A stretch of DNA of 64,000 nt from Diadema antillarum. Taxonomy: Eukaryota. The notes below the pieces were generated by a model, which searched no databases, was not told where the DNA came from, and worked only from the letters and a program-made list of their open reading frames with translations. This document shows, piece after piece, positions 57,544 through 60,237 of the stretch. Where the stretch lies: contig NW_027272128.1 in the NCBI RefSeq assembly GCF_040938485.1, positions 248,001 through 312,000 on the forward strand. Reading direction: 5' to 3'. Position numbers and translations under genes: made by a program. Position 1 is the stretch's first letter. Every line of letters starts with the position of its first letter.

Positions 57544-60237
57544 ATGGCGAACCGATTTTTTCTGAGAGTCCTGCTGTCAGTTTTCGTCTTTCTGGCGAGC
57601 TGTGATGCATTTGTCAGTGAGTATTTCAAATTTTTGTTTGTCGCAGTAGATTTATTGGTGACATTTACTGTTTTATTCATTTCATTTTTTTAATAGCAAA
57701 ATCGAACACGGGTGACATGAAAGCCTCGCTTTTCTTATAATATCACATTAATACAGTATGTATCAAAATTTGTCAATTGTTGACAAGATAAAACAACTTG
57801 TGAGAGGGTAAGCAATAAATTGACATTGAATTTAATTGAATGTGTATGTGTATGTATGGATGTTGATATAACTAAATATATTATCATAGTCATTCATGCA
57901 TGTATTGTATATACAAATATTTACGTATAATCCATGACATGGTGTGCAGTTAGAAACGAAAAACACAAATAACATTCAGTCGTTAATAACGTAGGCTGAA
58001 TCGGCAACGACAAAGATATCAAGAGCGTAATCATGATAATGTGTAGTACATAATCCGACTTCACTGTTATGATCATACAAGTCGTGTAATGTAAGGCAAC
58101 AGGATACAACTGAAATGACATTTCAAAGTGTAATAAGGGACGTTCAGTCATATCAAGAAATCTCCATAAAATGTTGATAAAAAAGATGTATTATTGACTA
58201 TCGATGTAAACATAAAGAGTAATATAATCATGCTCTTGAGCGTTCAAAATGAATGTCCACAATTCCTTTGTGCAACTTTTACGCTTTTCTGCAGTTAATC
58301 GTGAGGCAGAAGCCACTGTGTCTGATGAGCCACGCCCTAACAACGGCTCCATAAATCCACCTGCCGAGGGGACACAACCACCCAGGGATGAGCCTACAGC
58401 TCCTCCACCACCACCTCCATCACAACCACCACCTCCATCACAACCACCCCCTGCATCACCACCACCCAATGGGGACAGTGATTCGGCAAACGTTGATAGT
58501 GCAAGTGACAACCAGGCTCCCTTGGCAAACAGCAGAGATGACCAGGAACGCAGACCTCAAGGTGAAGTTGGTCCCGAAAATGCAGGCCGACCCAGTAACG
58601 ACAGGAATGAAGGCAGAGCTGAACGTCCAGCTGAGAACCAGCAAGGGGCCGACCGTCCTCAAATCCGACAGGAAGGAGAAAACGCCGAAGGGCGTGGTGA
58701 GTCTCAGCAACAGCAAGCAGGGCGTCCTGAGAATGGTGGCAGTGAGCAAAATCGTGGAGAACAGCAGAGGCCTGTCCAACAAGCAGAACGTCCGTCTGAG
58801 CAGCAACGTAGAGCCCGTGATGTAAATGGCCAAAGAGGCTCACCCGAGGGCGGTGAAAACATCGATAGTCGTCCCGGCGAAGCTGAACGTCCAGCTGAAA
58901 ACCAACAAGGAGGAGAAGCAGATCGCCCCGAGAATCGTCCCAATGACCAGGCACCAGCAGAGCAGCAGCGCCAAAACGGCTCACCCGAGGGCGCTGAACG
59001 TCCAGCTCAGAACCAGCAAGGAGGCGACAGTCCACAAATCCGACAGGAAGAAGGAAACGGGGAGATGCGTGGCGAGTCGGCACAGGAACGACCACAGCTT
59101 CCTGAGAATAGTGGCAGCGAACAGTCTCCAGCAGAGCAGCAGAGGCCTGAAGAATCCCAGATGCCATCTCAGGAGCAACGTAGAGCTCGTGATGTAAATG
59201 GCCAAAGATCATCACAAGCTGAACGTCCAGCTGAGAACCAGCAAGGGGCCGACCGTCCTCAAATCCGACAGGAAGGAGAAAACGCCGAAGGGCGTGGTGA
59301 GTCTCAGCAACAGCAAGCAGGGCGTCCTGAGAATAGTGGCAGTGAGCAAAATCGTGGAGAGCAGCAGAGGCCTGCCCAACAAGCAGAACGTCCGTCTGAG
59401 CAGCAACGTAGAGCCCGTGATGTAAATGGCCAAAGAAGCTCACCCGAGGGCGGTGAAAACATCGATAGTCGTCCCGGCGAAGCTGAACGTCCAGCTGAGA
59501 ATGAACAACGAGGACAAGCAGATCGCCCTGAGAGTCGTCCCAATGACCAGGCACCAGCAGAGCAGCAGCGTCAAAACGGCTCACCCGAGGGCGCTGAACG
59601 TCCAGCTCAGAACCAGCAAGGAGGCGACCGTCTACAAATCCGACAGGAAGAAGGAAACGGGGAGATGCGTGGCGAGTCGGCACAGGAACGACCACAGCTT
59701 CCTGAGAATAGTGGCAGCGAACAGTCTCCAGCAGAGCAGCAGAGGCCTGAAGAATCCCAGATGCCATCTCAGGAGCAACGTAGAGCTCGTGATGTAAATG
59801 GCCAAAGATCCTCACAGGCTGAACGTCCAGCTGAGAACCAGCAAGGGGCCGACCGTCCTCAAATCCGACAGGAAGGAGAAAACGCCGAAGGGCGTGGTGA
59901 GTCTCAGCAACAGCAAGCAGGGCGTCCTGAGAATAGTGGCAGTGAGCAAAATCATGGAGAGCAGCAGAGGCCTGCCCAACAGGCAGAACGTCCGTCTGAG
60001 CAGCAACGTAGAGCCCGTGATGTAAATGGCCAAAGAGGCTCACCCGAGGGCGGTGAAAACATCGAAAGTCGTCCCGGCGAAGCTGAACGTCCAGCTGAAA
60101 ACCAACAAGGAGGACAAGCAGATCGCCCCGAGAATCGTCCCAATGACCAGGCACCAGCAGAGCAGCAGCGTCAAAACGGCTCACCCGAGGGCGCTGAACG
60201 TCCAGCCCAGAACCAGCAAAGAGGCAACCGTTCATAG
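57544..60237 (+). CDS. Secreted low-complexity tandem-repeat protein, putative proprotein-convertase-processed polyprotein (671 aa)
   Basis: Exon 1, 57544-57616, encodes the signal peptide MANRFFLRVLLSVFVFLASCDA-FV (donor A|GTGAGT, phase 1). Exon 2 is 58295-60237 (TTTTCTGCAG|), with a Pro-rich segment and then 200-aa repeats rich in Q/E/R/G/P/S/N. Flanked by a TATA box and AATAAA. Confidence 0.88.
58618..60234 (+). repeat. Coding tandem repeat, 600-bp period, about 2.7 copies
   Basis: The 60-nt lines starting at 58621, 59221 and 59821 are identical; only scattered substitutions separate the units. Confidence 0.97.

What the first reader, a model, noticed from the sequence alone, without database searches (positions are those of the whole stretch)
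57544..60237. Secreted repeat polyprotein with five identical furin-type sites: a candidate multi-peptide secretion system
Seen: a signal-peptide exon, then a region with no Cys, Lys, Trp or Tyr in which QRRAR|DVNGQR recurs five times (new N-termini at 58819, 59191, 59419, 59791, 60019). Known: R-X-X-R is the minimal furin/proprotein convertase motif, and repeated sites mark multi-copy peptide precursors. Inference: cleavage would release an N-terminal Pro-rich piece plus alternating 124- and 76-aa peptides and a 72-aa tail. All would start DVNGQR and be disordered and Gln/Glu-rich. I do not recognise the family. Possible roles (all hypotheses) are skeletal or extracellular matrix, adhesive or mucus, egg coat, or a Gln-donor substrate for transglutaminase. 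TATA plus E-box suggests regulated, tissue-specific expression.
Basis: partly seen in the sequence, partly recalled or inferred. Interest (0 to 1): 0.82.

Follow-up and report, generated by a model that had tools for sequence, protein, structure and literature searches.

The report
Orphan secreted repeat protein, possible polyprotein
This sea urchin stretch very probably holds a two-exon gene for a secreted, floppy, acidic repeat protein with no detectable relatives; its five "cut here" motifs are real, but they are recent copies of only two older sites, and neither cutting nor expression has been shown.

Summary
A signal-peptide exon (57544-57616) joins exon 2 (58295-60237) through GT-AG in phase 1. 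The product is 671 aa, rich in Gln, Glu, Arg and Pro. It has no Cys, Lys, Trp or Tyr after the leader. RRAR|DVNGQR occurs five times, at the stated coordinates.

The five sites are not independent. A 600-bp superunit is repeated 2.7 times at 97% identity. Each superunit has three old unit types: two end in RRAR-DVNGQR, and the short one lacks it. That leaves two old sites.

Those two sites sit in one of the two best-conserved blocks of the unit: 0 nonsynonymous changes where about 5 are expected. The reading frame shows purifying selection (dN/dS 0.36) and is open well beyond chance.

No Pfam family matched. An exhaustive search of 1.84 billion proteins gave no hit. Echinoderm proteomes are in the parent collection, and a power test showed the search would find relatives at about 35% identity. 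No RNA run was listed, so splicing and expression are untested.

Best reading (0.4): a lineage-restricted secreted pro-protein cut by a furin-type convertase. This is a known kind; examples are nematode polyprotein allergens, salivary proline-rich proteins and Baramicin. Function is unknown.

The parts
57393..57398 (.). E-box CACGTG upstream of the TATA box
   Evidence: A single palindromic hexamer, not informative on its own.
57413..57419 (+). TATAAAA box, 125 nt upstream of the ATG
   Evidence: The position suits a start site near 57445. The only ATG between it and the start codon is at 57440.
57544..57616 (+). Coding part of exon 1: signal peptide (aa 1-22, likely cut after Ala22) plus 2 residues and the first base of a split codon
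   Evidence: Kozak-like agccATGg. Two Arg in the n-region, a hydrophobic core VLLSVFVFLA, and C-D-A at -3 to -1. Highest 19-residue hydropathy is 2.2 here, against at most -0.76 in the rest of the protein.
57617..58294 (+). Intron, 678 nt, GTGAGT...pyrimidine tract...CAG, phase 1
   Evidence: Inferred from the sequence only; no RNA evidence.
58295..58617 (+). Unique 5' part of exon 2: acidic, Pro-rich N-terminal region, including an 18-bp repeat (58407-58466) that encodes PPPPSQ-type runs
58618..60234 (+). Repeat array: a 600-bp (200-aa) superunit repeated 2.7 times at 97% identity. Each superunit is a long unit L1 (88 aa), a short unit S (37 aa, no RRAR, with an N-G-S sequon) and a long unit L2 (75 aa)
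58807..58818 (+). RRAR site 1 (end of an L1-type unit), followed by DVNGQR
59179..59190 (+). RRAR site 2 (end of an L2-type unit)
59407..59418 (+). RRAR site 3 (L1-type, recent copy of site 1)
59779..59790 (+). RRAR site 4 (L2-type, recent copy of site 2)
60007..60018 (+). RRAR site 5 (L1-type, recent copy of site 1)
60235..60237 (+). Stop codon TAG, at the point where repeat homology ends
   Evidence: family D4, last copy 60193-60242 at 78%.
60472..60477 (+). AATAAA poly(A) signal, 235 nt after the stop
58394..60271 (-). 625-aa antisense ORF, read as a by-product of the T-poor repeat and not as a gene
   Evidence: dN/dS in this frame is about 1.3, against 0.36 in the sense frame. No Pfam family above cut-off and no relatives.

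Best explanation
This is a real, lineage-restricted two-exon gene. Exon 1 supplies a cleavable signal peptide. Exon 2 encodes a 649-aa acidic (pI about 4.7), intrinsically disordered protein rich in Gln, Glu, Arg and Pro. It grew by duplication of a unit of about 70 aa and then of a 200-aa superunit. Two of the three unit types end in the conserved block Q-R-R-A-R / D-V-N-G-Q-R. In the trans-Golgi or secretory granules a furin-type proprotein convertase probably cuts after RRAR, perhaps only partly. That would turn one translation product into an N-terminal Pro-rich piece, alternating 124-aa (net charge about -11) and 76-aa (about -1) pieces, and a 72-aa tail. This makes it a tandemly repetitive polyprotein. 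Shown here: the sequence anatomy, an ORF open beyond chance, selection on the frame, extra constraint on the motif block, predicted disorder, and absence of detectable relatives. Inferred: splicing, secretion, cleavage, and any role of the pieces.
For: The gene signals are coherent: TATA, Kozak ATG, leader, a phase-1 GT-AG intron directly after the leader, and AATAAA.

The ORF is open beyond chance even for its 11% T composition: P = 0.006 per frame for the unit and 0.04 for the unique part.

Between the old unit types L1 and L2 (46 differences in 216 nt) the sense frame has dS 0.53 and dN 0.19. That ratio, 0.36, is the lowest of all six frames. Synonymous changes are about 1.8 times the neutral share.

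The last 11 codons (QRRARDVNGQR) carry 1 synonymous and 0 nonsynonymous changes, where about 5 nonsynonymous are expected from the rest of the unit.

Only 2 further R-x-x-R motifs occur outside the five RRAR sites, although the protein has 84 Arg, and 37 of the 84 Arg are followed by Pro.

Mean hydropathy is 0.275, far below the Uversky boundary of 0.435, and 83% of residues are disorder-promoting. The AF2 model has pLDDT 56 and pTM 0.14. The sites should therefore be accessible.

Convertase cutting of repeated R-x-x-R sites in aromatic-free, disordered, Pro/Gln/Gly-rich secreted pro-proteins is documented for salivary PRPs. It is also documented for nematode polyprotein allergens and Baramicin.
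Against: No RNA run was listed for the locus, so splicing and expression are unproven. No homologue exists to test conservation of the motif.

The five sites reduce to two independent ones. Their identity at synonymous positions could reflect gene conversion and not selection.

RRAR has Ala at P2 and Gln or Glu at P6. It is the minimal furin motif, not the optimal R-X-K/R-R (my own knowledge of furin specificity).

The short unit type has lost the motif. The opening block of the unit (AERPA.NQQG) is about as conserved as the RRAR block, so conservation of the block is not specific to a cleavage site.

The scarcity of other RxxR motifs is not significant once the recent copies are collapsed. 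This is my estimate: about 2.3 expected, 0 seen, P about 0.1.
Confidence: 0.4

Rival explanations
1. The gene is real and the protein is secreted, but it stays essentially intact. The RRAR-DVNGQR block is then a conserved repeat-boundary motif with another role, for example binding a partner, mineral or polyanion, or a short helical element. The protein would act as a long disordered acidic matrix, coat or clot component.
For: The opening block of each unit is about as conserved as the RRAR block. RRAR is only the minimal motif. The single-sequence AF2 model places its only short helices exactly over the RRAR sites. The protein carries nine S-x-E motifs and four N-G-S sequons, which are typical of modified secreted matrix proteins. 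Sea urchin biomineral matrices contain many disordered repeat proteins.
Against: An exposed R-R-A-R followed by Asp-Val in a disordered secretory protein is hard to shield from convertases in the trans-Golgi. The same tetrapeptide is cut in a well-known viral glycoprotein (own knowledge). Acidic salivary PRPs with a plain R-x-x-R are cut at least partly.
Confidence: 0.25
2. It is not a working gene. It could be a young or decaying ORF, or a coding-like minisatellite that happens to sit behind a leader-like ORF. It may be unexpressed, or expressed without function.
For: No RNA run was listed, although notes by other agents report transcripts for other loci of this genome. There was no self-hit or relative in any protein collection. 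The repeat copies are 97% identical, so much of the ORF is very young. The array ends by truncation of a unit.
Against: The ORF is open well beyond chance. dN/dS is 0.36 in exactly the frame that joins the leader exon. All indels between unit types are in frame. The full set of promoter, Kozak, splice and poly(A) signals is present.
Confidence: 0.2
3. It is a divergent immune-effector gene of the Transformer (185/333) style. That would mean a leader exon plus one repeat-rich exon encoding a Cys-free disordered protein made by coelomocytes, with the repeats serving diversification and multimerisation.
For: The layout is the same: a short leader exon, an intron of a few hundred nt, and a second exon with tandem and interspersed repeats. 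The protein has no cysteines and is disordered. Dinucleotide microsatellites lie on both flanks: (CT)n at 56848-56883 and CA/TC runs at 61310-61390. Other agents' notes say this genome has Transformer-like genes elsewhere (not checked by me).
Against: There is no sequence similarity. The exhaustive search found nothing. Published Sp185/333 peptides align no better than their shuffles, z at most 1.4. There is no RGD motif, only one His, and no Gly-rich N-terminus. No second copy lies in the window.
Confidence: 0.1
4. A different product is made from the same DNA: either an unspliced, non-secreted protein starting at the ATG at 58249, or the 625-aa antisense ORF.
For: Both ORFs exist. The antisense ORF has a more ordinary amino-acid composition.
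Against: The antisense frame has dN/dS of about 1.3, no family above cut-off and no relatives, and it starts at GTG. The ATG at 58249 lies 46 nt upstream of a good acceptor site with a pyrimidine tract, and the stretch it adds looks like intron.
Confidence: 0.03

Closest known systems
Tandemly repetitive polyproteins: nematode polyprotein allergens (ABA-1, gp15/400) and filaggrin
   Same: One ORF holds head-to-tail units of similar sequence. Basic, furin-like motifs are regularly spaced between units. The repeats are encoded without introns. The precursor is cut into many copies (PMC3079579).
   Different: NPA units are folded helical lipid-binding proteins with K/R-X-K/R-R sites. Here the units are disordered and acidic, come in two alternating sizes, and carry only R-R-A-R. 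There is no sequence or fold relation. Filaggrin has no signal peptide.
Human salivary proline-rich proteins (basic PRPs from PRB1/2/4; acidic PRPs)
   Same: Secreted, aromatic-free, disordered repeat pro-proteins rich in Pro, Gln and Gly. Convertases cut them before secretion at repeated R-S-X-R or R-x-x-R sites into several peptides. Some of those peptides are transglutaminase substrates (PMC10454625).
   Different: Pro is only 11.5% here, against a much higher share in PRPs (own knowledge). This protein is acidic and rich in Glu and Arg. The motif context is different and there is no homology.
Drosophila Baramicin A; also apidaecin and drosocin multipeptide precursors
   Same: A secreted precursor with tandem related peptides between furin sites, described as a 'protein operon' (PMC8423362).
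   Different: The released peptides are short (23 aa) and cationic or antifungal, with RXRR sites. Here the pieces are 72-177 aa and anionic.
Sea urchin Sp185/333 (SpTransformer) genes
   Same: Same gene layout and protein style: a leader exon, an intron of about 0.4-0.7 kb, one repeat-rich exon, no Cys, disordered, and microsatellites on the flanks (PMC3342357).
   Different: No sequence similarity, no RGD, no His-rich region, no gene cluster in the window.
Granins (chromogranins and secretogranins); own knowledge, not tested
   Same: Acidic, Glu/Gln-rich, disordered secretory proteins cut at several basic sites into peptides.
   Different: Granins use mainly dibasic KR/RR sites, are not tandem repeats, and have conserved terminal motifs. 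No similarity was found.

Membership tests
Tandemly repetitive polyprotein (functional class, not a homology family) | Head-to-tail units of similar sequence within one ORF | tested here: met
   A 600-bp superunit repeated 2.7 times at 97% identity, built from three older unit types.
Tandemly repetitive polyprotein (functional class, not a homology family) | Regularly spaced basic convertase motif (K/R-X-K/R-R) between units | tested here: inconclusive
   R-R-A-R occurs at 5 of 8 unit ends, with spacing 124/76 aa. It meets the minimal R-X-X-R motif but not K/R-X-K/R-R, because P2 is Ala. The short unit lacks it.
Tandemly repetitive polyprotein (functional class, not a homology family) | Repeat region encoded without introns | tested here: met
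   The whole array lies in one 1.94-kb exon.
Tandemly repetitive polyprotein (functional class, not a homology family) | Precursor is actually cleaved into unit-sized products | not testable with these tools
   No proteomic or RNA data could be reached. No run was listed.
Nematode polyprotein allergen family | Sequence homology and a helical lipid-binding fold in the unit | tested here: not met
   No Pfam hit, no hit in 1.84 billion proteins, and a model without a fold, pTM 0.14.
Salivary proline-rich proteins | No aromatic residues, with high Pro, Gln and Gly (PMC10454625) | tested here: inconclusive
   There are no aromatic residues after residue 23. Gln is 15.8% and Gly 10.3%, but Pro is only 11.5% and Glu plus Arg make up 26.5%.
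Salivary proline-rich proteins | Homology to PRB/PRH genes and the KSRSXR convertase consensus | tested here: not met
   No hits. The motif context is Q-Q/E-Q-R-R-A-R.
Sp185/333 (SpTransformer) | Two exons: leader, then a mature protein with repeats | tested here: met
Sp185/333 (SpTransformer) | Gly-rich N-terminal region, central RGD, His-rich C-terminal region | tested here: not met
   No RGD (RGE occurs 7 times), one His in total, and a Pro-rich N-terminus.
Sp185/333 (SpTransformer) | Sequence similarity to family members | tested here: not met
   No hit in the exhaustive search. Seven published peptides align no better than their shuffles.
Neuropeptide or hormone precursor | Short peptides flanked by dibasic KR/RR sites, often with Gly for amidation | tested here: not met
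   There is no Lys at all. The pieces are 72-177 aa, and no G-K/R-R motifs occur.

The most novel reading that the evidence does not exclude
This is a tandemly repetitive polyprotein in an echinoderm. My limited literature search found none described there. It would belong to a family with no detectable relatives. One transcript would be cut at RRAR into two alternating kinds of disordered peptide, one strongly acidic (124 aa) and one near-neutral and Gln-rich (76 aa), released in fixed 1:1 stoichiometry. The pair could act together, for example in mineral, matrix, clot or mucus formation, or as anionic immune peptides.
Probability: 0.3. Interest if true: 0.55.

Novelty: new member of a known kind. 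Interest (0 to 1): 0.36.

Why it matters
Tandemly repetitive polyproteins are described as rare, and why cells make proteins this way is unresolved (PMC3079579). If this gene is expressed and cut, it would add an example from a different phylum, with disordered units and a built-in 1:1 pairing of two peptide types. It would also be a taxonomically restricted secreted gene of the long-spined sea urchin. That identity comes from other agents' notes and I did not check it. The species is of ecological interest. As it stands, the finding is a clean gene prediction with a plausible processing motif. It is useful as an annotation and as a target for RNA-seq and proteomics, but it is not yet a discovery.

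Tried and rejected
- Pfam on the sense protein gave no family.
- A word-indexed protein search of exon 2 gave nothing.
- An exhaustive phmmer search against 1.84 billion representatives gave 0 hits at E <= 0.001, not even a self-hit.
- The ESM Atlas gave no usable hit.
- Exact-product look-ups for the 662-aa ORF and the 49-aa exon-1 ORF found nothing on record.
- Degenerate DNA patterns for QRRARDVNGQR and AERPA(E/Q)NQQG were scanned in metagenome contigs. The first gave nothing. The second gave two chance matches in GC-rich contigs with no further similarity.
- A paper search for the motif strings returned only unrelated hits.
- Control for database coverage: a retroelement ORF from the window found Lytechinus, Strongylocentrotus, Apostichopus and Amphiura proteins, so echinoderm proteomes are in the collection.
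- I tried the best Lytechinus hit as a synteny anchor. Only the transposon matches, so the locus is not syntenic.
- The upstream ankyrin gene is split into exons too small to serve as a referenced query within the tool's length window, so no orthologous region could be fetched.
- The antisense ORF had no family above cut-off and no relatives, and was rejected as a by-product.
- I found no paralogue in the window and no transposon-like terminal repeats around the gene.
- The spliced 671-aa protein has no reference, so it was never sent to a database tool. Exon 2, which is 96% of it, was used instead.
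Full report
**What is there**

- The ATG at 57544 sits in agccATGg.
- Exon 1 ends at 57616 and GTGAGT follows.
- The acceptor (pyrimidine tract, then CAG) ends at 58294.
- The intron is 678 nt and in phase 1, and the split codon reads Ile.
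- The frame stays open to TAG at 60235-60237.

The product is 671 aa: Gln 15.8%, Glu 14.0%, Arg 12.5%, Pro 11.5%, Gly 10.3% and Ala 9.4%. After residue 24 there is no Cys, Lys, Trp, Tyr or Phe.

The first 22 residues look like a signal peptide. There are two Arg, then the core VLLSVFVFLA, then C-D-A at -3 to -1. The 19-residue hydropathy maximum is 2.2 here, against at most -0.76 anywhere else. This is a heuristic judgement, since no SignalP was available. A phase-1 intron right behind a leader is the usual layout for secreted proteins (own knowledge).

TATAAA lies at 57413, a CACGTG at 57393 and AATAAA at 60472. RRAR occurs at aa 196, 320, 396, 520 and 596.

**Repeat anatomy**

The array (58618-60234) is a 600-bp superunit present 2.7 times at 97% identity. 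Splitting the protein at each AERPA shows three older unit types in each superunit:
- L1, 88 aa, contains QQRRAR-DVNGQR, followed by a 15-aa tail (GSPEGGENIDSRPGE).
- S, 37 aa, has the corresponding junction shortened to EQQR-QNGSPEG. It carries no RRAR and has an N-G-S sequon instead.
- L2, 75 aa, ends in EQRRAR-DVNGQR plus three residues (SSQ).

The five sites are therefore three recent copies of the L1 site and two of the L2 site. Recurrence five times counts as two observations, and one unit type has lost the motif.

**Is it coding?**

The sequence has only 11% T, so long ORFs are cheaper than usual. Even so, in 2000 dinucleotide shuffles a 600-bp unit stays open in a given frame with P = 0.0064. 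The unique 323-bp 5' part of exon 2 stays open with P = 0.039. The open frame is the one that joins the leader exon.

L1 and L2 differ at 46 of 216 aligned nt. In the proposed frame dS = 0.53 and dN = 0.19, a ratio of 0.36, which is the lowest of the six frames.

A 625-aa antisense ORF (58394-60271) is also open. In that frame the ratio is about 1.3. It has no Pfam family above cut-off and no relatives. I read it as a by-product of the composition.

The three recent copies differ too little to add much.

**The motif block**

Within the L1/L2 comparison the last 11 codons (QRRARDVNGQR) have one synonymous and no nonsynonymous change. The rest of the unit predicts about five nonsynonymous changes, which gives roughly P = 0.005. 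I worked this out by hand from the counts, and it is not corrected for choosing the block after seeing it.

This block and the opening block (AERPA.NQQG.D.PQIRQE) are the two best-conserved parts of the unit. The RRAR block is therefore constrained, but not uniquely so. Near-identity at synonymous sites leaves gene conversion open as an explanation.

Of the 84 Arg, 37 are followed by Pro, and only two further R-x-x-R motifs exist. This fits cleavage being confined to the RRAR sites. Once recent copies are collapsed, however, the depletion is not significant (my estimate).

**Physical nature**

The mature protein is about 71 kDa with pI 4.7. Mean hydropathy is 0.275, against a Uversky boundary of 0.435, and 83% of residues are disorder-promoting.

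A single-sequence AlphaFold2 model of one superunit has pLDDT 56 and pTM 0.14. Its only short helices lie over the two RRAR sites. A model made without an alignment is weak evidence, but it agrees with disorder.

The predicted pieces alternate between strongly acidic (124 aa, net -10 to -12) and near-neutral and Gln-rich (76 aa, net -1 to -2).

**Relatives and expression**

All searches for relatives were blank:
- Pfam gave nothing.
- The word-indexed search gave nothing.
- The ESM Atlas gave nothing usable.
- The exhaustive phmmer search of 1.84 billion representatives gave no hit at E <= 0.001, not even the protein itself.

Two controls give that blank some weight. First, a retroelement ORF from the same window retrieved Lytechinus variegatus, Strongylocentrotus purpuratus, Apostichopus japonicus and Amphiura filiformis proteins. 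Echinoderm proteomes are therefore in the collection from which the exhaustive library's representatives are drawn. Second, I simulated divergence. At the same database size, phmmer still finds a full-length copy with 70% of positions replaced (E below 1e-30). It also finds a single 200-aa unit at that divergence (E about 1e-14).

Notes by other agents say the genome is Diadema antillarum, a lineage distant from those annotated urchins (not checked by me). For a fast-evolving disordered protein, 'no detectable relative' then means lineage-restricted or diverged beyond recognition, or simply unannotated.

Splicing and expression are untested. Because other agents report transcripts for other loci of this genome, this is mild evidence against broad, high expression.

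I could not fetch an orthologous region:
- The Lytechinus locus reached through the transposon is not syntenic.
- The neighbouring ankyrin gene is too finely split to serve as a query.
- Pattern scans of metagenome contigs gave only chance matches.

**Mechanism**

The best-supported reading is a secreted pro-protein cut after RRAR by a furin-type convertase.

Points in favour:
- The site lies exposed in a disordered chain.
- It has Arg at P1, P3 and P4.
- Asp at P1' is acceptable for furin and Val at P2' is favourable (own knowledge of furin specificity).
- The block is constrained.

Points against:
- The motif is minimal, with Ala at P2 and Gln or Glu at P6.
- Cleavage could be partial, as it is for acidic salivary PRPs, or absent.

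I put 0.4 on the processed polyprotein. I put 0.25 on a secreted protein that stays intact, and 0.2 on a silent or non-functional ORF. A Transformer-style immune effector gets 0.1 (a functional alternative that shares only the gene layout), and other products get 0.03.

**Comparison with known systems**

The kind is known.
- Nematode polyprotein allergens and filaggrin are tandemly repetitive polyproteins with regularly spaced furin-like motifs and intron-poor repeat regions (PMC3079579).
- Basic salivary proline-rich proteins are aromatic-free Pro/Gln/Gly-rich pro-proteins. Convertases cut them completely at KSRSXR during granule storage, and some products are transglutaminase substrates (PMC10454625).
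- Drosophila Baramicin is a 'protein operon' with RXRR sites (PMC8423362).

None of these is homologous to this protein.

Within sea urchins, the Sp185/333 genes share the layout: a leader exon, a short intron, one repeat-rich exon, no Cys, disorder, and flanking microsatellites (PMC3342357). This protein lacks RGD, a His-rich region and any sequence similarity to them.

I found no paper describing these motif strings. My searches also turned up no echinoderm tandem polyprotein. Those searches were limited.

**Verdict**

If true, it is a new, orphan member of a known kind. I score interest at 0.36.

Noticed in passing
window 58394-60271 (-): A 625-aa antisense ORF runs through the whole repeat array. 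Two of six frames being open occurred in only 0.1% of shuffles of the unit. Its dN/dS is about 1.3 and it has no relatives, so it looks like a by-product of the T-poor sequence.
   Followed up: yes
window 58696, 59296, 59896 (+): Each L1 unit contains a perfect splice-donor consensus G|GTGAGT inside the coding repeat. There is no pyrimidine-rich acceptor nearby, so use is unlikely. Long-read RNA could show in-frame repeat skipping.
   Followed up: no
window 56780-56890 and 61310-61390: Dinucleotide microsatellites flank the gene on both sides: (GT)n/(CT)16/(GT)n about 660 bp upstream of the ATG, and CA/GA/TC runs about 1.1 kb downstream of the stop. This recalls the GA microsatellites that flank Sp185/333 genes, though such repeats may simply be common in this genome.
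   Followed up: partly
window 17113-18021 (-): A 302-aa ORF from the C-terminal part of a Penelope-like retroelement, with a GIY-YIG domain. The best protein hit is Lytechinus variegatus at 83%, and the DNA match to that locus is also 83%, restricted to the element.
   Followed up: partly
window 20569-20919 (-): An exon of a short-chain dehydrogenase/reductase gene (adh_short, E = 3e-14).
   Followed up: no
window about 42849-51600 (+): A multi-exon ankyrin-repeat gene lies upstream. ANK-like exons are near 42.85, 44.5 and 47.65 kb, a disordered exon near 48.3 kb, and a last exon ends ...CTCVIT* at 51547-51600. A C-terminal CaaX-like end on an ankyrin protein recalls PPP1R16 (MYPT3/TIMAP)-type proteins; that is from memory and untested.
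   Followed up: partly
window 12439-13284 (+): A 281-aa ORF rich in Pro, Ser and Thr with no Pfam match. It may be a large exon of an unidentified gene.
   Followed up: no
window 58407-58466 (+): An 18-bp tandem repeat (3.3 copies, 92% matches) encodes the PPPPSQ-type proline runs of the N-terminal region. It is a likely site of length polymorphism.
   Followed up: no
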